64,000 nucleotides of DNA from Scyliorhinus canicula. Taxonomy: Eukaryota. The notes beneath the pieces were generated by a model that saw nothing but the letters and a program-made list of their open reading frames with translations, did no database searches and was not told the origin of the DNA. The translations under genes were made by a program, and so were the position numbers. The stretch lies in assembly GCF_902713615.1 (NCBI RefSeq), contig NW_024055492.1:186001-250000 (forward strand). The letters are read 5' to 3'. This document shows positions 9,891 to 62,706 of this stretch, piece after piece; position 1 is the first letter of the stretch; each line of letters starts with the position of its first letter.

Positions 9891-11565
9891 CAGTCTCTGT
9901 GGTGCAATTGGTCAGCGTGTTTGGCTATTTACCGCAAGGTCTGCGTTTCAAGGCCGGATTCTTCTTTATTTGCTGACAGGTAGAGTAACGATGGGCCGAG
10001 GAGCCTCTTCCTGTGCTATTAAATGCTACCTACCTTTGAAAATCCCTCCACACTCTGGATTTACCGAAAGAACCTTCTCTGGACTGCCTCCAAAATATCT
10101 ATCCTTATATAAGGAGACCAAAACTGTTCACAACATTACAATGTGCCCTGGTGGAATTTGTACTCCTGTGTATGGAGTATTAGTTCAGGCCCCCAGATTA
10201 CCCGTTTTGTAATAATATTGCGAGACTATCCAGAAGACTGTAATATCCCGGCATCAAAAAGATGTAACAATTGAACGTTAAACACTCCTTCTGCATTGGA
10301 TCACAGGCTGGATCATGTGCTCAGTATCTGTTGTGGGAGGTGATAGTGATTCCACTGAGACATCATCATGGTTTGCATTTTAACATTCTGAAATGTTGTT
10401 CGGTGAATCTAAAGTTCAAACTATGGGCCCAGTCTTACATGGGTCAATTTAATTTTCCGAGGCTGGTCTTTTACTAGTCTTGGGTCTTATTCTGACACGA
10501 TGGGGTGATAGGGAATTCCACTGGCTCCATGTAAAATATCAGTTATTCCAAAAATAGCACACCAGGGTCAGTTTCTGTTTTGTATCACACCGAACGATGT
10601 TCCTGTTGCCTGTCACGATATTATAAATGTTTTTTTTTTTTGCTTATTTGTACAAGTATAATCATTGTTGATTTGGAGATTATATTAATTTTTGTTAATT
10701 CTAACAAGCAGTTCTATGAAATTTGTATTTGTCTCTGCTATCATGTGGGTAATATTGAGTTTATTATTTTACCAACGTCCCAGTAATGAACTGGGCTTGA
10801 GGGACAGGCCTAGACGTGAACATGGCTGCACTGCAGTTTCGAAAAGTTAATGGAAATCTCTGTTTTGTTCAAAATGATGAATTTACTCTTGTATTACACT
10901 CTATCCATTGGAAAGTTGTTTTCGTGGTGAGGATTCTTTTCCTGCCTCGTTTTATATTTACCAATCACCTGATATACTGGCGGTGTTAGACAGAACAGTG
11001 CTCTAACAGAATCACCAGATTTGGCACCCACAGGATAAATATCCACCCAATCGTAGAACTCTCATCTGGTTAAGAAGAGCAAGTGAATTCACCGCAAACG
11101 GGTATTGGCCGTTCGTGTAGGTGTGTATATAAAATATTGTTCTTGAGTTTTGCAACTGTAATTGATCAAGACGTAATGTTATGTTCAGAATTAATTGTTT
11201 CGCTTTGCGGTGTCTTCATGCGTCTCGGCCCTAAGCTCTGGTATTCATTCCCTACTCCTCTTTACCTCAATTCCCTTATTAAAATCATCTCATATAACAT
11301 GCCTCGTCGACCAAGTTTTTACTCATCTGACCTAATAAGCCTTTACACATATATTAATCCAGACCCTGCAGCAGGAATGACTGCACTATACCATGCCTCA
11401 GTTTATAATACTCTCGACCCTGAATCAATAATCCCTGCTTTATATTCTATATCATTTAAGGGTAATCAACCTTTGTATCATAATTTCTGCACTAGAACCT
11501 GTTTGGGTTTCTGTTAGTCTAGATCCTGCATCTGTAATCACTGCACTAGATCCAATCTCAGTAGC

Positions 11566-25689: not shown

Positions 25690-26048
25690 NNNNNNNNNNN
25701 NNNNNNNNNNNNNNNNNNNNNNNNNNNNNNNNNNNNNNNNNNNNNNNNNNNNNNNNNNNNNNNNNNNNNNNNNNNNNNNNNNNNNNNNNNNNNNNNNNNN
25801 NNNNNNNNNNNNNNNNNNNNNNNNNNNNNNNNNNNNNNNNNNNNNNNNNNNNNNNNNNNNNNNNNNNNNNNNNNNNNNNNNAGATAAAGNNNNNNNNNNN
25901 NNNNNNNNNNNNNNNNNNNNNNNNNNNNNNNNNNNNNNNNNNNNNNNNNNNNNNNNNNNNNNNNNNNNNNNNNNNNNNNNNNNNNNNNNNNNNNNNNNNN
26001 NNNNNNNNNNNNNNNNNNNNNNNNNNNNNNNNNNNNNNNNNNNNNNNN
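25690..26048. other. Assembly gaps (N runs 25690-25881 and 25890-26048)
   Basis: Runs of n in the sequence. Confidence 1.
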
Positions 26049-32362: not shown

Positions 32363-32401
32363 AGTTTTTGTCCGAGGATCTCACTCGTTGCCATCACTGT
32401 G
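32363..32401 (-). promoter_or_regulatory. 23-RSS of V1
   Basis: Minus strand: CACAGTG (32401-32395), 23-bp spacer, ACAAAAACT (32371-32363). Confidence 0.95.
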
Positions 32402-33438
32402 AGACGCTGTGCACAGTAATAGACCGCGCTGTCAGACAGCCGCAGCTCCGAGATGGTCAATCGGTACAACTTCTCTGATTGTTGGAGGGTAACGGAAAAC
32501 CGTTCCTGAGCGAAATCCGCTTTCACTGGATCACCTCCGCTCTCGTATATCTGGACAGCAAACTCTGGCTCTCTATCTGGGTACTGACGGTACCAGATTA
32601 AATAATAAGCATCGTCGGTATAGGTGCAGGTTAAAGTGACATCTTCTCCCTCTGTCTGTGTGAGTGAGGATTCCCGCTGAGTAACAGAGTCTCCATCGCT
32701 CAGACCTGCAACACACGATTATAGAAATATTAGTCATCGATTAAACGTTACACTAAACTCAACCGACGGTCAAAATCTGCAATCAGAGTTATATAAAAAT
32801 AAATAGAAGTGAGAATGTAAGATAGTAATTCGACCTCACTGGCTATATCAGTGTTAACCACCCCCTCCCTCTCCATCTCACTCTCTCAGCAAATTAACCC
32901 ATTATTTTATTCACCTTCTGTTTCTCTACATTGCTCCAATGCATCAATACCATTTTCCTCAACTGTTCCATGTGGTAGTGAATTCCACGTTCAAACCGCT
33001 CTTTGTGTGACGAGGTTTCTGCTGAATTCCCCATTAGATATTTTAATGACGTTTGTTGTAACTCACAGTTTTGGAATTCTCCATAAGGGCAAACACCTTC
33101 TTGTATTTCCCATCGAACTCCGTCATTACAACGAGATCTATTACATTACCCTTCGGAATACCGTTTAATAGAGAACAGTACCCGAGTTGTAGCGTTATAT
33201 GACAATATGCCGCACTTATGAAATTATTATTCTGTGTGGTATTCTGTGCCCTATATTCATCTTGTAAAATACATACAATAAACGCTTAATACAAACCAAG
33301 GCCGAATCCAGGTACAAGTTTAGCATGTATTCCCTGGCTTTCCAATGTATCCCTCCTGAATTTAAACATTTGTAAAGTTTCAAACTTCTTACCTGCAATG
33401 ACTATCACCCAGGCCAGAGCGAGAGTGGGGAACCGCAT
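32402..33438 (-). CDS. TRAV/DV: T-cell receptor alpha/delta variable segment V1 (germline, open frame, inverted)
   Basis: Leader exon 33438-33393 (MRFPTLALAWVIVIA+G, GTAAG donor), 687-bp intron, V exon 32705-32402: LSDGDSVTQRESSLTQTEGEDVTLTCTYTDDAYYLIWYRQYPDREPEFAVQIYESGGDPVKADFAQERFSVTLQQSEKLYRLTISELRLSDSAVYYCAQR. Both Cys, WYRQ and the RSS are present. Alpha versus delta usage cannot be decided from sequence. Confidence 0.93.
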
Positions 33439-42254: not shown

Positions 42255-42713
42255 ATGCGGCTCCTCAGCATCTGGGTTGTGTGGGGAGCATTTCTAACAG
42301 GTATTTGTGGATACATCATATTTTCTTTCATTTCTAAAACATGGGTCGGATCTGAATTTTGAGCACATGTCCGTCTGATCTTTAATTGTTTGAACATGTT
42401 TTGCAGATCAGAGTCATGGAGATTCTGTCTCTCAGCCGCTGTCCTCAAATGTTCAGACGGAAGGAAAAGCGGTGACTTTGAACTGTACCTATGATACTGC
42501 AGAAAACAGCTATTATTTATTCTGGTACCGCCAACATCCAGACTCACAGCCCGAGTATATACTGAGGAAGCACTCGGGGGGTTATGAAGATAAAGCAGAC
42601 TTTGCTAAAGTCCGTTTCTCAACTGACCTCCAGACCTCGAAGAAATTCCTCAGTTTGACTATCGGGGATCTGCAGCTGAGTGATGCTGCCGTGTACTACT
42701 GCGCTTTCAGCCT
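42255..42713 (+). CDS. TRAV/DV: T-cell receptor alpha/delta variable segment V2 (germline, open frame)
   Basis: Leader exon 42255-42300 (MRLLSIWVVWGAFLT+G), 106-bp GT-AG intron, V exon 42407-42713: DQSHGDSVSQPLSSNVQTEGKAVTLNCTYDTAENSYYLFWYRQHPDSQPEYILRKHSGGYEDKADFAKVRFSTDLQTSKKFLSLTIGDLQLSDAAVYYCAFS. Confidence 0.94.
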
Positions 42714-42752
42714 CACAGTGATGCAAAGCAGCCTCACCCCTGTACAAAACCT
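42714..42752 (+). promoter_or_regulatory. 23-RSS of V2
   Basis: CACAGTG (42714-42720), 23-bp spacer, ACAAAACCT (42744-42752). Confidence 0.93.
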
Positions 42753-43112: not shown

Positions 43113-44840
43113 CGTTCGCCATGTTTGTGCGACGTACAGTCTGCCATCTTTGTGTGAAGAACAGTCTAACACGTTTCTGTGATGTGCAGTCTGCCATTTA
43201 TGTGTGATGTACAGTCTGACATGTTTGTGTGATGTACAGTCTGACATGTTTGTGTGATGTACAATCTGCCACATTTGTGTGATGCAGTCTGACATGTTTG
43301 TGTGATGTACAGCCTGCCGCATTTGTGTGATGTACAGTCTGACATGTTTGTGTGATGTACAGTCTGCCACATTTGTGTGATGTACAGTCTGACATGTTTG
43401 TGTGATGTACAGTCTGCCACATTTGTGTGATGTACAGTCTGACATGTTTGTGTGATGTACGGTCTGCCATGTTTGTGTGATGTACAGTCTGCCACGTTTG
43501 TGTGATGTACAGTATAACACGTTTCTGTGATGTACAGTCTGCCACGTTTGTGTGATGTACAGTCAGCCATGTTTGTGTGATGTACAGTCTGCCATGTTTG
43601 TGTGAGGTACAGTCTGCCATGTTTGTGTGATGTACAGTCTGCCACGTTTGTGTGATATACAGTCTGCCACGTTTGTGTGATGTACAGTCTGCCACGTTTG
43701 TGTGATGTACAGTCTGCCATGTTTGTGTGATTATACTGTCTGCCATGTTTGTGTGATATACAGTCTGCCACGTTTGTGTGATGTACAGTCTGCCATGTTT
43801 GTGTGATGTACAGTCTAACACGTTTCTGTGATGCACAGTCTGGCATGTTTGTGTGATGTACAGTCTGCATTGTTTGCGTGATGTACAGTCTGCCATGTTT
43901 GTGTGATGTAGAGTCAGCCATGTTTGTGTGATGTACAGTCTACCATGTTTGTATGATATACTGTCTGCCATGTTTGTGTGATGTAGTCTGCCATGTTTGT
44001 GTGATGTACAGTCTGCCATGTTTGTGTGATGTAGTCTGCCATGTTTGTGTGATGTACAGTCAGCCAGGTTTATATGATGTACAGCCTCCCATTTTTGTGT
44101 GTTGTACAGTCAGCCAGGTTTGTGTGATATACAGTCTGCCATGTTTGCGTGATGTACAGTCTGCCATGTTTGTGTGATGTAGAGTCAGCCATGTTTGCGT
44201 GATGTACAGTCTGCCATGTTTGTGTGATGTAGAGTCAGCCATGTTTGTGTGATGTACAGTCTACCATGTTTGTATGATGTACTGTCTGCCATGTTTGTGT
44301 GATGTAGTCTGCCATGTTTGTATGATGTACAGTCTGCCATGTTTGTGTGATGTAGTCTGCCATGTTTGTGTGATGTACAGTCAGCCAGGTTTATATGATG
44401 TACAGCCTCCCATTTTTGTGTGATGTGCAGTCAGCCAGGTTTGTGTGATATACAGTCTGCCATGTTTGCGTGATGTACAGTCTGCCATGTATTTGTGATG
44501 TACAGTCTACCATGTTTGTATGATATACTGTCTGCCACGTTTGTGTGATGTGCAGTATAACACGTTTCTGTGCTGTACAGTCTGCCATGTTTGTGTGATT
44601 ATACTGTCTGCCATGCTTGTGTGATGTACAGTCTGCCATGTTTGTGTGATGTACAGTCTGCCATGTTTGTGTGATGTACAGTCTGCCATGTTTGTGTGAT
44701 GTACAGTCTGCCATGTTTGTGTGATGTACAGCCTCCCATTTTTGTGTGATGTACAGCCTCCCATTTTTGTGTGATGTACAGTCAGCCAGATTTGTGTGAT
44801 GTACAGACTGCCATGTGTGTGCGACGTGCAGTCGGCCATA
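43113..44840. repeat. 25-bp minisatellite, about 70 units
   Basis: Unit atgtacagtctgccatgtttgtgtg with 23-bp variants and an internal ~321-bp higher-order duplication (44061 vs 44382). Confidence 0.97.
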
Positions 44841-45239: not shown

Positions 45240-47990
45240 TTGCTGTTTGGTTGAGAAGAAGGTGAATTTTCAATCAGCTTTAAACAAAGGTTCTACTTGT
45301 AGCTACTTGCAGCTGGAGCTTGTTAATTAGTTCATTGGATTAGGTCAGTTTTCAGAGGCTCGAGTCACAGAATAAATCTGAGCTAGTTACAGTGCAGACG
45401 AGTGCTGAATTTGGGTGCATTTGAGTGATCTCATGAGAGTTTGATAACTAAGGGAGTTAGGTGAGGAGGGGGTCAGCTGCTCCTTTCATTTAATTTCCTA
45501 CATTTCCTCAGAACGTTAAGGGAGCCCGGAGTTTACAGTTGGTCCACAGTGCAGCTGTATTCTGTAAGGTAAGAGGGGATGGAGGCTAGGGCAGTTGCAT
45601 GCTCCCCCTGTAGGATGTGGGTGGTGAGGGATACCACCGGTGTCCCCGATGACTATACCTGCGGGAAGTGCACCCAACTTCAGCTCCTCAGACGCTGTGT
45701 TAGGGAACTGGAGCTGGAGCTGGATGAACATCGGATCATCTGGGGTGTCTAGGGGGTAATAGAGAAGAGTTACAGGGATGTAGCCACACCCAAGGTACAG
45801 GATAAGAGTAGCTGGGTTACAGTCAGGGGAAAGGAAACAAACGGGCAGACAGTGCAGGGATCCCTCGTGGCTGTTCCCCTTCAAATCAAGTATAACGTTT
45901 TGGATGCTGTTTGGGGTGGATGACCTACCGGGGGAAGGCCCTAGCGGCCAGGTCTCTGGCACTGAGTCTGGCTCAGGGGCTCAGAAGGGAAGGTGGGAGA
46001 ATACAAAAGCAATAGTGACTGGAGACTCAATGGGTAGGGGAACAGGAGATTCTGCGGTCGCGAGCGAGACTCCCGGAAGGTATGTTGCCTCCCGGGTGCC
46101 AGGGCCAGGGATGTTTCGGATCGTGTCTTCAGGATCCTTAAGGGGGAGGGGGAGCAGCCAGACCGCGTGGTGCAAATTGGTATCAACGACGGAGGTAGGA
46201 AAAGGGGTGTGAAGGTAATAAACGAGTTTAGGGAGTTAGGCTGGAAGTTAAAAGCCAGGACAAACAGAGTTGACATCTCTGGTTTGTTGCTGGTGCCACG
46301 TGATAGCGAGGCTAGGAATAGGGAGAGAGTGCAGTTGAACACGTGGCTGCAGGAATGGTGGAGGTGGGAGGGCTTCAGATACTTTGATAATTGGAGCGCA
46401 TTCTGGGGAAGGTGGGATCTGTACAAGCAGGAGGGGTTGCATCAGAACCAGAGGGGTACCAATATCCTGGGACGGAGGTTTTCTAGCACTCTTCTGGAGG
46501 GTTTAAACTAATTTGGCAGGGGAATGGGAACTGTCGTCCAGCATCTAAGGTAGCCGATGTTCAGGATGTCAAAGCGTGTAGTGACGCAGTGGGGAAGGTA
46601 ACACTGACAAAGGAGAGTACTTTCAGGCACGGAGATGAGTTGAAGCGTGTATACTTCAACTCAAGAAGCATCAGGAATAAGGTGGGTGTACTTAAGGCAT
46701 GGGTCGGTACTTGGGACTACGGTGTGGTGGCCATCACGGAAACCTGGATAGATGAGGGGCAGAAATGGTTGGTGAAGGTTCCAGGTTATTGATGTTTCAA
46801 TAAGATTAGGGAGGATGGTAACAGAGGTGGGGGGTTGCATTGTTAATTAGAGATAGTATAAAAGCTGCAGAAAGGCAGTTTGAGGAGGATCTGCCTACTG
46901 AGGTAGTATGGGTAGAAGTCAGAAATAGGAAAAGAGCAGTCACCTTGTTCAGAGAGTGGTGGTGGATGGCAAATATTCAGCCTCAAGTCTAGTTACCAGT
47001 GGCGTACTGCAGGGATCAGTTCTGGGCCCTCTGCTGCTTCTGATTTTCATTAATGACTTGGATGAGGGAGTTGAAGGGTGGGTCAATAAATTTGCAGACG
47101 ATACGTAGATTGGTGGAGTTCTGGATAGTGAGGAGTGCTGTTGTTGGCTGCAAAGAGACATAGATAGGATGCAGAGCAGGGCTGAGAAGTGGCAGACGGA
47201 GTTTAACCCTGAAAAGTGTGAGGTTGTCCATTTTGGAAGGACAAATCTGAATGCGGAATACAGGGTTAATGGAAGGGTTCTTAGCAAAGTGGAGGAGCAG
47301 AGAGATCTTGGGGTCTATGTTCATAGATATTTGAAAGTTGCCACTCAAGTGGGTAGAGCTGTGAAGAAGGCCTATGTTGTGCTAGCGTTCATTAGCAGAG
47401 GGATTGAATTTAAGAGCCGTGAGGTGATGATGCAGCTGTACAAAACCTTGGTAAGGCCACATCTGGAGTACTCTGAGTAGTTCTGGTCGCCTCATTTTAG
47501 GAAGGTCGTGGAAGCCTTGGAAAAGGTGCAAAGGAGATTTACCAGGATGTTGCCTGGAATGGAGAGTAGGTCTTACGAGGAAAAGTTGAGGATGCTAGAC
47601 CTTTTCTCATTAGAACGGAGAAGGATGAGGGACGACCTGATAGAGGTTTATAAGGTGATCAGGGGAAGAGATAGAGTAGACAGGCAGAGACTTTTTCCCG
47701 GGTGGAACAAACCATTACATGGGGACATAAACTTAAGGTGAATGGTGGAAGGTTTTGGGGGGGATGTCAGATGTAGGTTATTTACCCAGAGAGTAGTGGG
47801 GGCATGGAATGCACTGGCTGTGGAAGTAGTTGAGTCAGAAACATTAGGGACCTTCAAGCGGCTATTGGATAGGTTCATGCAATAGACTGATGGGGTGTAG
47901 ATTAATTTGTTCGTAATCCAGGAGCTAAAGTTTGGCACAACATTGTGGGCCGAAGGGCCTGTTCTGTGCTGGTATTTTTCTGTGTTCTAT
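45240..47990 (+). mobile_element. CR1-type LINE with ORF1 (zinc finger + esterase/SGNH-like) and internally deleted ORF2
   Basis: ORF1 45579-46511 (frameshifted): MEARAVACSPC…CGKC…GDSMGRG…LPGA…QIGIND. Endonuclease start VYFNSRSIRNK…ITETWI joins directly at ~46948 to [12 protein letters not shown]…KFADD, then the 3' UTR. Confidence 0.9.
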
Positions 47991-50610: not shown

Positions 50611-52429
50611 ATCATGGGTTATATGCTGTCAAAAGGGTGCGGGAACAAAAAGGAAGGTCTGCGATGGTTCGAGAATAGGAGAGATTAAATGACAAAGATG
50701 TCATGGAACAAAGGAAAAGAGAGTTATAATGGTTGGAGTACAGAGGCAAAATACCCAACCCCACCAGCATAAATAGACACCAATCGTCTTTGAGTTTGAA
50801 AACGTCTAACCAGCAACAACACCAGGCAAGTCGGAGTGAAACATCAATGTTGGCTGTTAAAAGGCAAATGTGAGGCGATCTTTTAATTTAAACCTCATTA
50901 GCGAATTAAGTAAGAATGCAGATGGAGTTCTGGACAACTGGTTTTATTGCCATTTCAAATAAATATCCCTAGATATAATTCATTCAATTGGGATGTTCCT
51001 CTTCTATTATCAATTGCTTCTCGTGAGCTTAGGAGGATGTATCTTTGAGACTCTCCCATGTTTCTCATATGTTAACTGTGACCCTTTGTAAGAAAGACTC
51101 TCCTAAATCGAGCTGGTGACTGCGGTGGAGGAACAAGCGGTTTAAATCTTGACGGATGAAAACACCAGTAGTAGTGATAGCTATATGTGGTTCTGATGGT
51201 TAACCTGACTGGGCAGCGGGAGATAGATATACTGACAACATCCAGATAGACAGATTAGCAAATGGACAAATAATAGAACGACACCGAGATAAGTGAATTA
51301 ATTTATTATTCCCTTATCCACGAATACTTTATTTAATTATCCTTCCATATATAATTATATTTGTTTTGTTCCTGATTTGGCAATTTTGCGTTGTGAGCTA
51401 GAGGAATTTCGGATTTCGTGTTGTCGGGGACCTTTTCGACAAAGCATTTCACTTTATCATCACATCTCGATCGACTTTACAAAATCTGTATTCTGAAACA
51501 GACAGGTCTCCAAATGAGTTCCCGATTGTCCCTCTTGTCATTCAGAGATAACATTCAGTGGTTTGAAGTATGTGTGCACCTGGACAAAGCTCCAGCATTC
51601 TTATTGGTTTAATAGTCAGATGTTGCTGTGTACTGCAGTGCAGTAAGACAAGGGAAAAAGCCACCCAGTCTGTGGTTTTGGTGCCGTAGTAATCATGCCA
51701 CTAAGTTAGTCGAATGAAATTTGAAATAGGAAGCTAAATTCAGTGATTGCAATCGTGAAACTGTCACCTTTATGTCCATAAACGCCTAACTGATTCATTT
51801 GTGCCCTTTATGGAAGGAAATCTGTCACTCTGAACTGGGCTGACTTAAATCTGACTCAACATGTGGTTTTTCACTGCCCGCTGAATTAACCGAGCAAGTA
51901 AAAATCTTCAACAAACATAATTAAATGTGAACCGTGTTATTTAATAGAATCAAATATAATTTCACAGTTTTTTAAAAAATTGCAATTACATTTCTCTCAA
52001 TTTCACACAAAATCAGAGCTCGTCGAAACAATATTCGGCCTCCTTGTAGCTGCCCTGGTAGTTTTTGCCGCTGAATGCAGAGGGAGAATTTCCCTGCAGC
52101 TGTTTCCTGCTCTATCTGCCATTGAAGTATTTTATGGGACAGTGCAGTGGAACTTTATTAGGTAACTAAGACGTGTGCGCTACTGATTGGGCAGTGAGGA
52201 GGGAGATATTTTGTTGTGTAATATATGTATAGTCCCTGCCCTGAAACTGTTTGATAGGGCAAATAAAGCCGATTTCGTTTCGTATCGATAAAATGTCGTT
52301 CCTTATTGATACGTTTCTTTCTTTTCTCTTGTTATCTATGACCATTTGCCTCCGTGTGCTCTTTGCAAGTACATAGATAGTCTGCAAGCCGTTTTATGTG
52401 TCCAACTGGAGGATTGTGAACATTGTGTT

Positions 52430-52740
52430 TTGGGCAGCAGGGTAGCATAGTGGTTAGCTTCACAGCGCCAGGATCCCAGTTTCGATTCCTGTTTGGGTAA
52501 CTGTCTGTGCGGAGTCTCCCCGTGTCTACGTTGGTTTCCTCCGGGTGCTCCGGTTTCTTCCCACAGTCCAAAGTTGTGCTGGTTAGGTGGATTGGCCATG
52601 CTAAATTGCCCTTAGTTAGATAGGGTTACTGCGTTACGGGGACAGGGTGTAGGTGTGGGCTTAAGCAGGGTGCTCTTTCCAAGAGCCGGTGCAGACGCGA
52701 TGGGCCGAATGACCTCCACTGTACTGTAAATTCTATGAAA
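52430..52740 (+). mobile_element. HE1-like SINE
   Basis: gggcagcagggtagcatagtggttagc head, core, ttctatg tail. Confidence 0.8.
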
Positions 52741-52976
52741 TAATAGAGCTTAATTCCACATTAAGTAAAAATAATGCTGTTGGCTTCAGTATGGTTAATA
52801 GACAATGTTTGTTCAGTGACTGTACTAAAGTCGGTCTCGATAGACCACGCTTGTGTCCACAGAGGGTTTTCCTTCTCTATTAATAAGGAAAACTTGCGAT
52901 GTGCCATTCCACAATGTGGGTGAGGGCATCACCTCCGGCACGAACAGGGATCGAACACTCGACAGAGAGGCTGAAA

Positions 52977-55930
52977 ATGGCAAAGAGTCTTTCACTAAAC
53001 GGGCAGATAACAAATTTTCTCATTGAATTTCAGGAGGTGCTCTATCCCACCCTGGCTGTTATTGGTGTTCCAAGTGAGTCTCTCTATTCAGCTATTAATT
53101 CGATAAGCTATGCTTAACTCTATTAATATTTTTGTCGATTATTATCTCCTTATTGATTCGTGTTTCTCGCAGATACAACTATCAATTCCATGTATAATCT
53201 ATCACATCATTGCTGTTCTCGGCTTTTTTAAGAAGTCGATCTATACACTGCTGCCATTTTTCGCACTGGTTTCGCTTTGTATCAATTGCCGTTTGTTTAA
53301 CTATTGCTCTGGAAACAATTTGTTGAAATGAGAACAATGAATGGTACGTTCTTACTGCTACATGTTTTTCGGTTTTAGATTAAAGTATGCTTGGAGCGTC
53401 AACCATTTAGAAATCGGAACTCTATTTGGATAAATATAAATATGTGTCCCGAATTTGAGAAAACACTCCGGGCTAATAGATTACAAGTAGTTGTTGGAAA
53501 ATCACGCTCTAATAGCTGTATGATTCAGTATGACACATCGCAAATTCCTTTTCCAACCGTCAAACTCAAATCGCGATTCATTTTTCTATATGTTTTAATG
53601 TTGTAATAATCTTGAATTATCACCCACAGCTAAGTGGATTATTTTTCTTTGACTTTTCAATTTACGTACTTCCAAGTGTTATTTGAAATAATTGAATTTC
53701 CTGGCAGCTGCTGAAGGGATCTCCCAATTATTTTAGTGCTTAAATGTTTTGTGTCTTCCTCTATACACGCAAATGCTTCTATCTGGTTAGTATGCCATTA
53801 TATGAATTCAAGAGAACTTTGACATTCTGCCTGAGTCTCCATCTTAGGAAACGCATGAAGTTTCAAAATTATTTTTACTGGATGTGAGGCTTCGCTGACT
53901 AGGCCAGTATGTGTTGCCCATCTCTAATTGTCCTTCAGAATCTCGTGTTGAGCTGCTTCTTGAAACGCTGCAGTGCACGTGATGCAGGTATATTCACTGT
54001 GCGATTAGGGAGGGAGTTCCAGGATTTTGACCCAGCTGCAGTGAAGGAACTGAGATACATTTGCAAGTCAAGATGGTGAGTGACTTGAAGGGGAACCTTC
54101 AGGTGGCCGTGTTCCCACATATATGTTGCCGTTGACTTTCTAGATGGTCGTAGCCGTGGGTTTAAAAGCTGCTGCCACAGGAGCCTTGGTGAGTCGTGCA
54201 GAGTATGCTGGAGATGGTACACACTGCTGCTAGTATGCGGCGGTGCTGGAGTGAATGGGTGCTTATGAAGGGGTGCCAATCAAGCGTGCAGCTTTGACCT
54301 GGATGGTGTAAAGTTTCTTCAGTGATGTTGGAGCTGCAATCATCGAGGTTATTGGGGAGTATGCAATCCCATTTCTGACATGTGCCTTGTTGTCAGTGGA
54401 CAGGCTTTGAGCGTCAAGAGCTGAGTTACTCGTTGCAAATTTCCAAGCCCCTGGATGTTTTAAAAACTGCATGAACTTTGTTACTTTCATTGAAATGGTT
54501 TCTAGATTTCAGCGAAATGTATCCATACCATTAGCAATCTCGAAACGTTCCGATAGAAAATGTGTGTAATCAGCTGACATTAGATATCACACCCAGTTAC
54601 AAAATAATGAGTTTCCTTAATTTTAATTTCAATAAGCAATCCAATTGATAGCTGTTTGAGAAAGCAGAAAGCCAACAATTTGGTATTTTATCCCAAAAGA
54701 TCATTTCTGTTTTACGGCTGTTTTGAGAAAATTGTATGCCGCAGTGTCAGCGAAAAGAAGACAATTATTGTTCTGTTAATTTCCATTCATCACTCCATCG
54801 AATTGCACGTTTACAAACTTTAGGAATTGCTCAGTGGGATTGATAATAGCACTTTGGGTGTAATTACACCACAGAGACGGTAACAGTTCAATGAGGTAAT
54901 TCGTCGCCACCGTCACAAGGGCAATTAGGGATGAACACTAATGCTGAATAAGTCGTCGGCGCCCAAACCCTGTGAAAGAATAAAAATGCGTGATTTGTAA
55001 TGTTCTGTTCTTTTTCTCTTCCATACAGTTAACTTGGTAACAATTGTGATCCTGTGTCGTGGTAAATGTGGTCTCTCTAAATGTGTCACTTACTATCTGG
55101 TGGCCATGGCAGCAGCGGATCTACTGGTCGTTATCATTGACCTGATATTGAGGCACATTCCTGTTCTTTATTGGAAACAGTTTTCTTTTGTGTATGACAT
55201 TCATGTGTGTAATATTCACGCCGTTGTGCTTTATGCAACCACAGACTGCTCGGTCTGGTTCACTGTCAGTTTCACGTTTGATAGATTTGTAGCCATTTGT
55301 TGCCAGAAATGGAAAGATAAATATTGCACTGTGAAAATCACACTTGTTGTCCTGGGTACAGTGACCGTGCTGAGTTGCTTAAAGAATGTTTTCTGGTATT
55401 ACATGCTATCACCAAGATATTGGCTTATCAATTTCCCTTGGTTTTGTGAGGTGAGAAGCGGTGTTATGGAGTCTCAATTCTGGGCCACAATCGAATTTCT
55501 TCATAATATCGTTACCCCGTGTGTCCCGTTTATTCTGATATTGTTTCTCAACAGTTTAACCATCAGACACGTATTAGTGTCCAGCAGAGCCCGGCGGAGA
55601 CTCCGGAATCACAGCAGTGGAGAGAGTATGAGAGACCCAGAGATGGAAAGCCGAAGGAAATCCATCATTTTGCTATTTGTTATCTCGGCGAATTTCATGC
55701 TCTTATGGACAATGTTTATGGTTTACTCTATATGGTGGCGAATGTGGGTTCTGGGATATGAATCTGTACGGTTTCCTGACTTTGTTCTGGAAATGGGCTT
55801 CATGCTGCAGCTCCTTAGTTGCTGCACAAACACTTGTATTTATGCTGTGACGCAGACGAGATTCAGAGAGCAGTTGATGCTTGTGGTGAAATATCCCATC
55901 GCAGTGTTTGTAAAATCAATTAAAAGATGA
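52977..55930 (+). CDS. Class A orphan GPCR, GPR139/GPR142-like (type expanded in cartilaginous fish), two exons, 332 aa
   Basis: Exon 1 52977-53073 (MAKSLSLNGQITNFLIEFQEVLYPTLAVIGVP+A, GTGAGT donor), 1955-bp intron, exon 2 55029-55930 (…NLVTIVILCRGKCGLSKC…AADLLV…FTFDRFVAICC…PCVPF…CCTNTCIY…). Seven hydrophobic segments, DRF in TM3, no internal stop. In-frame upstream ATGs at 52899 and 52914 are alternative starts. Confidence 0.9.
53870..54470 (-). mobile_element. LINE family B 3' fragment in the GPCR intron
   Basis: Reverse complement of the family B tail (…AAGSKSWNSLPN…). Confidence 0.75.
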
Positions 55931-57359
55931 AAAGCACACTTGAAGTGTTTCCCGCATCACAACTCAATTTATTTTTCTCCAACTCAGTATCCCTTAGAGT
56001 GTCACTGAAACAGTTTAATGCTAACCCAGCAGTGTCATACACTCTCCAAATTGTTGTCACAATATCAATACAGAGCGAGTTGTGCGCACCCCGCCAAACT
56101 TTATACTGTGAACACTTTGACAGAAAACATTAGTTTATGTTATTACAATCTCAAAGTTTGCTATTCATTGTACTCCACTGCCGAGGACTGACAATAATAA
56201 ATAAATTATTAAATTCTTGACTTATACATGCAATGAAAGTGATATGACCCATGTGTGACCATCAACCTTGCCCCGTGTACAATGGAGAGAGGCACAGAAC
56301 CAACTTAGAACAGTGCAAGGGACAACTTCCAATTAGAAAGCAAATACCGTTCCCCGACAAATACTCAATATCATCACAATTGTGGAGACACGATTTTTAT
56401 CGTTTTTTAAAAATGATTTTTCCAGGATGTCAGTTTTGTTGTCTAGGCCAACATTTGTTACTCATCCATAATTTCCCTTGAGAAGGTGGTGGTGGCTGCG
56501 TTCTTGAACAGCTGCAGTCCATGTGGTGTAGGGACACCCACAGTGCTCTTACGGTGGGAATTTCCGGGAATTTGACCCAGAGTCAGTGAAGAAACTGTGA
56601 ATTCCACAGATTAACGACCCTGTGAGAGAAGTAATTTCTCCTCGCCTTCGTTTTACATCAGGGTTACTAACTGCTGGAGTCCGAGCCTTTGGTTTTCTCT
56701 TTTAGCCAGAGCATTCACTATAGCAATAGTATTTAAATAGCAAGTGCAGTTCAGCTTTTGGTCTATGGTAAACCCAGGATGTTGATAATGGATAATTCAG
56801 TGCTGGTAGCGCCATTGAATATCATGGGGCGATGGTTCGCTTCTCTTATATTTGAGATGGTGATTGCCTGGCAATTTTATGAATCGAAATTTACTTGCCA
56901 TTTGTGAACCCAAGCATGGATATTATCTAGGTCTTTCTGTATTTGCACGTGACGGTTTCAGTGTCGAAGGAGTCTCGAATGGTCTGAAAATAATGCAATC
57001 ATCAGCGACCATGCCCACTTCGGACTTTTATGATGTACCGAAAGTCCCTGGATGCAGGAATGGTTCTGGTGGATTGTAAAAATGCTGATATAACGTAGAT
57101 ATTCAAAAAGGTGGGTTACAGAAAGGAGAAAACTATAGACAAGTTAGCTTAATATCTGTCGTTGGGAAATTGTTAGAATACATTGTTAAGGGAGTAAAAA
57201 CAAGACATTTGAAGAGTCAAAACGCAATATATCAGAGTCAGCATGGTTTTATGAAGGGTAAAGCGTATTTGACTAATTTGCTAGATGTCTTCGGAGATGT
57301 ACCAAGCCACTTGGATAACGGGGATCCTGTAGATCTGGTGTATAGTGGTATACAGCGAG

Positions 57360-61340: not shown

Positions 61341-62094
61341 AAAGTGAGCATGCTTTAAGAGGTATCTGGGCAAACGACAAACTGACCCCTCCCAGTATCT
61401 GCTTTATTTCCAGGGATCACATCCTTTTCTAATGTGAGTAATACCCATGTGGGCAGATTTTCATGCACAGTTTTGTTCAGTTCCGGTTACCCATGGGCTT
61501 TGAACCAGCTTCGCCAGCCTCCTTCCGGAGAACTATAATACACAGCAGTGTGACAACTTGCGCTGCAAAGTGCCAATGTGCTGATCCTTCATCAGGTGAA
61601 GCCGTTTCATACTGTACCTATTTATAATACATCTTATGGTTCCAGATGTTTAAATATATCTTTGCAACAGGATAAAAAAAAGATAGAATATTAACGTCAG
61701 ACTATATTCATTAAGTATTAATGTCTTAATGATTAAGACAATCTCCATGCAGCGTTTGAATTGGTTACAACACCAAACCCCAAGTGTGTCTCCTTCGGGA
61801 ACATTTTCACAACGATGTTGCCTTCTCCACACTTCCCGCCACCAGGAGTAAAGTGAATTTCAGCTTTATAGACAATTCATCAGTTCAGATGTCACCAGCT
61901 GCAGAAGATAGCGGTAGATCAACAGCCCACGTCGTTTTTGTGCAGCCAATCAAAACCACGTGACAGAAATCTTCACTGCTGACGGCAACACGAACCGACT
62001 GGCGACTGTGCGCAGACGCTCTGAGTTCTTCTGATGTGAGCTCTGCTCCTCTCCTTTTCACATTTGAATAAAAATGATATATTACACGGTGCAA

Positions 62095-62668
62095 ATGCAG
62101 CTGCTCCCTGTCGTTCTCGTACTGCTGACCTGTAAGTACAGGGGACTTACTCAATAATATGTGGATATAGTGTATTTATTATTTTAAAAATAAATTTAGC
62201 GTATCCAATTTATTTTTTCCAATTCAGGGGCAATTTAGCGTGGCCAATCCACCTACCCTGCACATCTTTGGGTAGTGGGGGCGAAACCCACGCAGACACC
62301 GGGAGAATGTGCAAACTCCACACGAACATCTATAATGTATTTATATTCACCTTGCTCCAATTTCTCTTTTATTTTATAGGCCCATGTGGCTCGGACCAAG
62401 TGTCCCAGTCTCCCATTGCGACAATAACCCAGAGCGGAGATCCAGTGCAAATAAACTGCAGCTATGACATGTCCGGATTTAACGGAATGTATTGGTACAG
62501 ACAAAAATCCGGTCAGGGACCGGAGTGGATAATAAGCAGATTCTCGGCTGGCAAAGAGAGAAAGGACCGATTCGAATTGGAACTTTCCACTGCGGATAAA
62601 CGGGGCCAATTGGTGATTCAAGACACGGAGAGCGCGGATGCCGCTGTGTATTACTGTGCGATACAGCC
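62095..62668 (+). CDS. TRAV/DV: T-cell receptor alpha(/delta) variable segment V3 (germline, open frame, different family from V1/V2)
   Basis: Leader exon 62095-62131 (MQLLPVVLVLLT+T, GTAAGT donor; in-frame upstream ATG at 62074), 248-bp intron containing a SINE fragment (~62177-62328), V exon 62380-62668: PCGSDQVSQSPIATITQSGDPVQINCSYDMSGFNGMYWYRQKSGQGPEWIISRFSAGKERKDRFELELSTADKRGQLVIQDTESADAAVYYCAIQ. Confidence 0.92.
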
Positions 62669-62706
62669 CACACTGACAGGAAAGGCGCAGTCACTGTACA
62701 AAAACC
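62669..62706 (+). promoter_or_regulatory. 23-type RSS of V3 (22-bp spacer)
   Basis: CACACTG (62669-62675), 22-bp spacer, perfect ACAAAAACC (62698-62706). Confidence 0.88.

What the first reader, a model, noticed from the sequence alone, without database searches (positions are those of the whole stretch)
52977..55930. Intact orphan GPCR gene embedded between functional TCR V segments
A complete 332-aa GPR139/142-like receptor (DRF in TM3, NTCIY in place of NPxxY) lies 10 kb downstream of V2 and 6 kb upstream of V3, on the same strand. If J/C is to the right, every V2-or-upstream deletional join removes this gene from that allele, making T cells somatic mosaics for it. If J/C is to the left, V3 joins would invert it toward the TCR enhancer. 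Either way V(D)J recombination would change a non-immune receptor's dosage or context according to V choice. Mammals have olfactory receptors interleaved at the TRA/TRD 5' end, so this may be an independent parallel. Whether it is functional coupling or co-duplication of two expanding families cannot be told from one window.
Basis: partly seen in the sequence, partly recalled or inferred. Interest (0 to 1): 0.7.

Follow-up and report, generated by a model that had tools for sequence, protein, structure and literature searches.

The report
Shark receptor gene inside TCR V cluster
An intact, transcribed receptor gene from a very large shark-specific family sits between T-cell-receptor V segments in the small-spotted catshark, but nothing found here shows this is more than an incidental lodger, like the trypsinogen genes inside the mammalian TCR-beta locus.

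Summary
A two-exon, 332-aa class A GPCR gene (exon 1 52977-53073, intron 53074-55028, exon 2 55029-55930) lies 10.2 kb after V2's recombination signal and 6.1 kb before V3's leader, on the same strand. Its spliced translation is identical to the public model 'probable G-protein coupled receptor 139' of Scyliorhinus canicula, on a 270-kb contig. Contigs from two independent studies carry the exact predicted splice joint. Pairwise dN/dS against relatives is 0.20-0.27. V2, V3 and a third, opposite-strand V have leaders, phase-1 introns and 22/23-bp-spacer signals, and match TCR alpha/delta V domains best.

Any V-to-J join spanning the gene would delete or invert it, but that holds for every gene inside a V array. 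The gene belongs to a shark family with over 2,000 database clusters on many chromosomes. Three Heptranchias relatives sit in receptor arrays with no V segment in 132 kb. The window shows no co-duplication with V genes, no J or C segment, and no tissue information. Three polar ligand contacts of human GPR139 are hydrophobic here, so the ligand probably differs. First readers of this scan noted similar GPCR-in-TCR-V cases on two other pieces of this genome; these are unchecked.

The parts
52977..53073 (+). GPCR coding exon 1 (ATG to 32 codons + 1 nt; N-terminus and start of TM1, ends ...GVP)
   Evidence: Sequence. The spliced product equals P0001. Three Heptranchias relatives have the same exon end (GVP + 1 nt + GT).
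53074..55028 (+). Phase-1 intron (GT..AG, 1955 nt) carrying repeat-derived sequence around 53910-54060
   Evidence: Joint 53073->55029 in contigs of runs X2 and X3. Very high contig depth at 53910-54060 marks a repeat.
55029..55930 (+). GPCR coding exon 2 (TM1-TM7, helix 8, stop TGA 55928-55930)
   Evidence: Model with seven helices plus helix 8.
55931..56219 (+). 3' untranslated region, as far as transcript contigs reach
   Evidence: X3 contig covers 55555-56219 at depth 149; depth falls after about 56220.
42255..42752 (+). V2: leader exon 42255-42300, intron, V exon 42407-42713, 23-spacer RSS 42714-42752
   Evidence: Pfam V-set E 4e-16. Best single-domain solved matches are TCR alpha and delta V.
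62074..62706 (+). V3: leader exon 62074-62131, intron with a SINE-like insert, V exon 62380-62668, RSS 62669-62706 (CACACTG, 22-nt spacer, perfect nonamer)
   Evidence: Pfam V-set E 4e-15. Best single-domain solved matches are TCR alpha V.
32363..33438 (-). V1 on the opposite strand: candidate leader from 33438, V exon 32705-32402, 23-spacer RSS 32401-32363
   Evidence: Pfam V-set E 2e-17. 57% identical to V2.

Best explanation
This is a working member of a very large, shark-and-ray-specific offshoot of the GPR139 branch of class A GPCRs. It lies as a single copy in a transposon-rich spacer between TCR alpha/delta-type V segments. It is transcribed from its own two-exon unit, spliced as predicted, and has been kept open by purifying selection. 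Three polar ligand contacts of human GPR139 are hydrophobic here, so it probably binds something other than GPR139's ligands. Its place in the V array is most likely a by-product of DNA-level dispersal of a highly duplicative family into a duplication-prone region. V(D)J joins that span it would delete or invert it in T cells. That is a passive side effect, as for trypsinogen genes in TRB, not a regulatory device. Shown here: gene structure, identity to the annotated model, splicing, family size, constraint, and V segment anatomy. Inferred: function outside T cells, incidental location, and the different ligand.
For: The spliced CDS equals the annotated 332-aa protein. Pfam 7tm_1 matches at E 2e-18, and the model shows seven TM helices plus helix 8 and matches class A receptors at TM 0.6-0.77. 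The exact exon-exon joint 53073->55029 is present in two studies; in X3 exon 2 has depth 140-175 against 2-14 in the intron. Fourteen runs from 8 studies hold at least half of the exon 2 + UTR words, while sister runs of the same studies hold none. The family gives 2403 hits at E<=1e-5, and the top 120, from seven shark species, lie on many chromosomes and scaffolds. The protein keeps 152 of 163 family-conserved positions, against a family median of 157. dN/dS is 0.20-0.27 at dS 0.8-0.9. The intron position and phase are shared with relatives, which argues for DNA-level duplication rather than retroposition. Three Heptranchias relatives lie in GPCR arrays with no V segment in 132 kb. The window holds one GPCR and three dissimilar V segments. 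GPR139 pocket residues E108, R244 and N271 (PMC12775434) align to L, F and F. Non-TCR genes inside TCR loci are an established pattern (PMC2685407; PMC7824213).
Against: The tissue of expression is unknown, so expression in thymocytes is not excluded. First readers flagged two other pieces of this genome with a GPCR inside a TCR V array, which hints at more than one landing. The contig is only 270 kb and the wider locus was not seen. The expressed copy differs from the window at four exon 2 sites (three of them amino-acid changes). It may also have a different 5' part of exon 1, so the window allele itself may not be the transcribed one. The terminal branch is long, 0.68 against a median of 0.3. 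A frame-shifting alternative joint 53073->55555 was also seen.
Confidence: 0.7

Rival explanations
1. Functional coupling: the receptor is expressed in developing or mature T cells, and V(D)J deletion or inversion, or the TCR enhancer, sets its dosage or expression according to V choice.
For: The geometry allows it. The gene is transcribed in a subset of samples of unknown tissue. First readers noted two other GPCR-in-TCR-V cases on other pieces of this genome.
Against: No J, C or enhancer is in the window. Family members elsewhere are not near V segments. No read joined the gene to a V exon. One oligo-dT RNA run had zero reads on the gene. Known embedded genes such as trypsinogens show no such coupling.
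Confidence: 0.05
2. Assembly artefact: the adjacency of the GPCR and the V segments is a chimeric join or a collapsed haplotig on a short, 270-kb contig.
For: The contig is only 270,398 bp. The region is rich in repeats. Contigs from other animals differ from the window at about 35 intron sites.
Against: The 20 kb from V2 to V3 has no N run. A 2.1-kb contig from an independent run is collinear across the intron, exon 2 and UTR. First readers report similar layouts on other pieces.
Confidence: 0.08
3. A decaying copy: the window allele is drifting towards a transcribed pseudogene even though its frame is still open.
For: The terminal branch is long. Retention of conserved sites is slightly below the family median. 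A frame-shifting alternative splice and a variant 5' part of exon 1 appear in transcripts, and three of four exon differences from the expressed copy change an amino acid.
Against: The 999-nt frame is open at dS 0.8-0.9 from its nearest sampled relatives, with dN/dS 0.20-0.27. All eleven departures from conserved sites are substitutions, most between similar residues. The canonical productive splice is present in two studies.
Confidence: 0.12

Closest known systems
Human GPR139 (solved structures 7vug, 9m42)
   Same: It is the best sequence match among solved structures (E 7.5e-9). Both are class A receptors with a D-R-aromatic motif in TM3, W6.48, H at the aligned 187 position, an aromatic residue at 109, and an N-x-x-x-Y motif without proline in TM7.
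   Different: The match score is low (38.6 bits). The polar contacts E108, R244 and N271 are L, F and F here. GPR139 is a single gene; the shark family has thousands of members. By fold the model ranks with cholecystokinin and chemokine receptors, not specifically with GPR139.
Shark/ray 'probable GPR139' expansion
   Same: It is 64-74% identical to members from Heterodontus, Heptranchias, Pristiophorus, Mustelus, Stegostoma and Scyliorhinus. It has the same two-exon structure with a phase-1 intron after GVP.
   Different: The other sampled members sit in tandem GPCR arrays. This one is solitary, on a long branch, and flanked by TCR V segments.
Trypsinogen genes inside the mammalian TRB locus
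   Same: They are non-immune genes of a duplicating family lying between V segments and the D-J-C clusters, and are therefore lost on alleles that join upstream V segments (PMC2685407; the deletion consequence is established V(D)J knowledge).
   Different: Their synteny is conserved across mammals. Conservation could not be tested for the shark gene.
Olfactory receptor genes at the 5' end of mammalian TRA/TRD
   Same: They are class A GPCR genes of a large family next to TRA/TRD V segments. OR10G3 is the IMGT 5' border gene (PMC7824213).
   Different: They lie at or near the locus edge (interleaving with the first TRAV genes is from my own memory, not checked here). They belong to an unrelated GPCR family.

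Membership tests
Class A (rhodopsin-like) GPCR | Full-length match to the 7tm_1 profile | tested here: met
   E 2.2e-18, profile positions 2-260 of 260.
Class A (rhodopsin-like) GPCR | Seven transmembrane helices plus helix 8 | tested here: met
   AlphaFold2 model has mean pLDDT 69.8 and pTM 0.60, with helices 7-42, 50-79, 95-131, 134-159, 182-225, 236-272, 283-307 and 309-320. Foldseek matches class A receptors at TM 0.6-0.77.
Class A (rhodopsin-like) GPCR | Microswitch motifs D/E-R-Y, W6.48 and NPxxY | tested here: inconclusive
   DRF is at 117-119 and W259 is present. TM7 has NTCIY without proline, as in GPR139's NFFLY. P6.50 aligns to M.
GPR139/GPR142 subfamily | Closest to GPR139 by sequence | tested here: met
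   GPR139 is the top hit among solved structures at E 7.5e-9; the next is CCR1 at 4e-6. The margin is weak.
GPR139/GPR142 subfamily | GPR139 ligand-contact residues E108(3x32), R244(6x51), N271(7x38) | tested here: not met
   They align to L, F and F in the HMMER alignment. The residue list comes from PMC12775434.
GPR139/GPR142 subfamily | One-to-one orthology with vertebrate GPR139 | tested here: not met
   It is one of more than 2,000 shark database clusters and has no close orthologue in the tree.
TCR alpha/delta V gene segments (the flanking elements) | Leader exon, phase-1 intron, and V-set exon with conserved Cys, Trp and YYC | tested here: met
TCR alpha/delta V gene segments (the flanking elements) | Heptamer, 23-nt spacer and nonamer directly after the V exon | tested here: met
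   V1 has a 23-nt spacer and an 8/9 nonamer. V2 has a 23-nt spacer and a 7/9 nonamer. V3 has a 22-nt spacer, a perfect nonamer and the heptamer CACACTG.
TCR alpha/delta V gene segments (the flanking elements) | Closest to TCR alpha/delta V domains; linked to TRAJ/TRAC or TRD elements | tested here: inconclusive
   The best single-domain solved matches are TCR alpha and delta V. No J segment is in the window, and C exons were not searched.
Non-immune gene embedded in an antigen-receptor locus | Lies between RSS-bearing V segments on uninterrupted sequence | tested here: met
   No N run between 42255 and 62706.
Non-immune gene embedded in an antigen-receptor locus | Position conserved in related species | not testable with these tools
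   No orthologue was found. Shark V segments are absent from the protein database. The three fetched Heptranchias loci are paralogues.

The most novel reading that the evidence does not exclude
GPR139-like receptor genes have settled repeatedly inside catshark TCR V arrays: this window plus two other pieces flagged by first readers. At least some would be expressed in thymocytes or T cells, so V choice would alter the receptor repertoire of a T-cell clone by deletion or inversion.
Probability: 0.05. Interest if true: 0.7.

Novelty: new member of a known kind. Interest (0 to 1): 0.3.

Why it matters
By itself the case adds one more non-immune gene lodged inside an antigen-receptor locus, which is a known situation. 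Such genes become somatically mosaic in lymphocytes as a side effect of V(D)J joining. The more useful point concerns the family. Sharks carry thousands of conserved, transcribed GPR139-like receptors with a hydrophobic version of the GPR139 pocket, and I found no paper describing them in four searches. A genome-wide map of this family against TCR and Ig V arrays would show whether V arrays act as landing or nursery regions for other duplicating families.

Tried and rejected
- **Synteny through the closest relatives.** Three Heptranchias perlo loci (132 kb) were fetched and scanned. They hold GPCR arrays and no V segments, and they are paralogues, so they say nothing about orthologous position.
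- **Reaching other sharks' V arrays through V2's protein.** The protein database holds no V segment products, so the search gave nothing.
- **Earlier findings.** A look-up by place was also blank.
- **Literature.** Four searches for a description of the shark GPR139-like expansion found nothing. The library covers open-access papers only.
- **Tissue of expression.** Run and sample ids are coded and library descriptions carry no tissue.
- **Intron versus exon divergence.** Run contigs differ from the window at about 35 sites in the intron and 4 in exon 2. I considered this as evidence of selection and set it aside, because synonymous sites are equally quiet and part of the intron is repeat-derived.
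- **Fold search.** It confirmed only a generic class A fold.
- **Co-duplication of GPCR and V units.** This finds no support in the window.

Full report
**What is there**

The window holds a two-exon gene on the + strand.
- Exon 1 runs from the ATG at 52977 to 53073, followed by GTGAGT.
- Exon 2 starts at 55029, after a pyrimidine tract and AG, and ends with TGA at 55928-55930.
- Joining the two gives 999 nt. The translation is identical, residue for residue, to the 332-aa public protein 'probable G-protein coupled receptor 139 [Scyliorhinus canicula]', which sits on a 270,398-bp contig of assembly GCA_902713615.2.
- Pfam 7tm_1 matches over the whole profile at E 2e-18.
- An AlphaFold2 model built on 31 family members (mean pLDDT 69.8, pTM 0.60) shows seven long helices plus helix 8. 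It superposes on class A receptors at TM 0.6-0.77.

**The neighbours**

Three V segments are in the window.
- V2 (+): leader 42255-42300, phase-1 intron, V exon 42407-42713, then CACAGTG, a 23-nt spacer and a 7/9 nonamer.
- V3 (+): leader 62074-62131, V exon 62380-62668, then CACACTG, a 22-nt spacer and a perfect ACAAAAACC.
- V1 (minus strand): V exon 32705-32402, a 23-spacer signal and a candidate leader at 33438.

All three pass Pfam V-set. The best single-domain solved relatives of V2 and V3 are TCR alpha and delta V domains. The stated distances of 10 kb and 6 kb are right. No assembly gap lies between V2 and V3; the only N runs are at 25690-26048. The rest of the window is transposon debris: reverse-transcriptase fragments and an esterase-like LINE piece. 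No J segment was found.

**Is the gene alive?**

Contigs of public runs laid on 52400-56900 carry the exact joint 53073->55029 (GT..AG, 1955 nt skipped) in two different studies. In run X3, exon 2 and about 290 nt of 3' UTR stand at depth 140-175, against 2-14 in the intron. Searched alone, exon 2 plus the UTR is held at half of its words or more by 14 runs of 8 studies. Four sister runs of the same studies hold none, which points to sample-specific expression. One raw oligo-dT RNA run had no read on the gene. Run and sample identities are coded, so the tissue is unknown.

Constraint was checked two ways.
- Against three Heptranchias perlo relatives, pairwise dN/dS is 0.20-0.27 at dS 0.8-0.9. 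A 999-nt frame that stays open at that distance is not drifting freely.
- The protein keeps 152 of the 163 positions that are at least 90% conserved among 120 family members (family median 157), and all 11 departures are substitutions, most between similar residues.

Its terminal branch is long, 0.68 against a median of 0.3.

**What family**

The search returned 2403 proteins at E<=1e-5. The top 120 are all from sharks (Heterodontus, Heptranchias, Pristiophorus, Scyliorhinus, Mustelus, Stegostoma) and nearly all carry the automatic name 'probable GPR139'. They lie on many different chromosomes and scaffolds, and none is closer than 74% to this gene.

Relatives share the gene structure: exon 1 ends ...GVP plus one nucleotide before GT in three Heptranchias copies as well. 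The family therefore spread by DNA-level duplication, not retroposition.

Among solved structures, human GPR139 is the best sequence match, but weakly (E 7.5e-9). In that alignment NTCIY falls on GPR139's own NFFLY. W6.48, the histidine at the 187 position and an aromatic at 109 are kept. The polar ligand contacts E108, R244 and N271, listed in PMC12775434, align to L, F and F. It is therefore a GPR139-derived lineage, not a GPR139 orthologue, and it probably binds something else. This agrees with an earlier follow-up note of this scan on another piece of the genome.

**The interpretation**

The geometric argument is sound: a V-to-J join whose two ends bracket the gene must delete or invert it. 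But this holds for every gene in a V array and is already known in kind.
- Five to twenty trypsinogen genes lie inside mammalian TRB (PMC2685407).
- An olfactory receptor gene is the IMGT 5' border of TRA/TRD (PMC7824213).

Nothing here lifts the case above that.
- The window has no J, C or enhancer.
- V orientation is mixed, so even the direction of joining is open.
- No read links the gene to a V exon.
- The window shows one GPCR copy and three V segments only 28-57% identical to each other, so there is no co-duplicated unit.
- Three sampled relatives in Heptranchias sit in tandem GPCR arrays with no V segment in 132 kb.

A very large, mobile-by-duplication family will by chance leave members in large, repeat-rich, duplication-prone regions such as V arrays. 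I put 0.7 on this incidental-lodger reading.

**What keeps the door slightly open**

First readers of this scan flagged two other pieces of the same genome with a complete GPCR inside a TCR V array (s1-270795 and s1-262477). These are unchecked, and they may or may not be independent loci. Whether three such cases exceed chance needs a genome-wide count that these tools cannot make.

**Loose ends**

- All three contig runs share four differences from the window in exon 2. 55197, 55352 and 55401 change an amino acid and 55411 is silent. They also share about 35 differences in the intron.
- One X3 contig reaches exon 1 only from 53032 and carries 26 unmatched letters before it. Read in the downstream frame, those letters stay open but encode a different stretch.
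- X3 shows no depth over the window's ATG.
- A frame-shifting joint 53073->55555 and a minor joint 53073->53848 also occur.

The expressed allele or copy may thus differ from the window at the N-terminus.

**Verdict**

The gene is real, annotated, expressed and constrained. It is a new lodger of a known kind rather than a new mechanism. The coupling hypothesis is untested and unlikely. Interest is modest (0.3); most of the value lies in the undescribed shark receptor family itself.

Noticed in passing
window 43118-44839: A 25-bp minisatellite of about 69 copies (85% matches) begins about 370 bp after V2's recombination signal. It produces long spurious ORFs on the minus strand.
   Followed up: partly
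window 53032 (exon 1) and 52853-53003: In run X3 the transcript contig departs from the window upstream of 53032 with 26 unmatched letters that stay open in the downstream frame. No depth covers the annotated ATG. The expressed allele or copy may have a different N-terminal stretch.
   Followed up: partly
window 55555: An alternative acceptor inside exon 2 (joint 53073->55555, GT..AG) appears in two runs. It skips 526 nt and shifts the frame.
   Followed up: no
window 62133-62379: V3's leader intron carries a SINE-like insert.
   Followed up: no
window 52551-52701, 53910-54060 and 56477-56627: These stretches have extremely high contig depth in all runs, up to about 470,000. Joints link 53930 with 56475, so copies of one abundant repeat family flank exon 2.
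   Followed up: no
L002 about 10000-10300 and L003 about 10000-10200 (Heptranchias perlo): Upstream of exon 1, in frame, relatives carry tandem 14-residue repeats (of the type ...LRTIDWNVTTKGQ...) that inflate the automatic gene models to 374-401 aa. The window's gene lacks them.
   Followed up: no
window 32363-33438 (minus strand): A third, apparently functional V segment lies in the opposite orientation to V2 and V3. Some joins in this array must therefore be inversional, whichever side J/C lies.
   Followed up: partly
window 46167-46511: An ORF matches the GDSL-lipase/esterase profile below its Pfam cut-off (E 1.7e-6, 29.1 bits against 32.9), next to reverse-transcriptase fragments. It is probably part of a LINE element with an esterase domain.
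   Followed up: no
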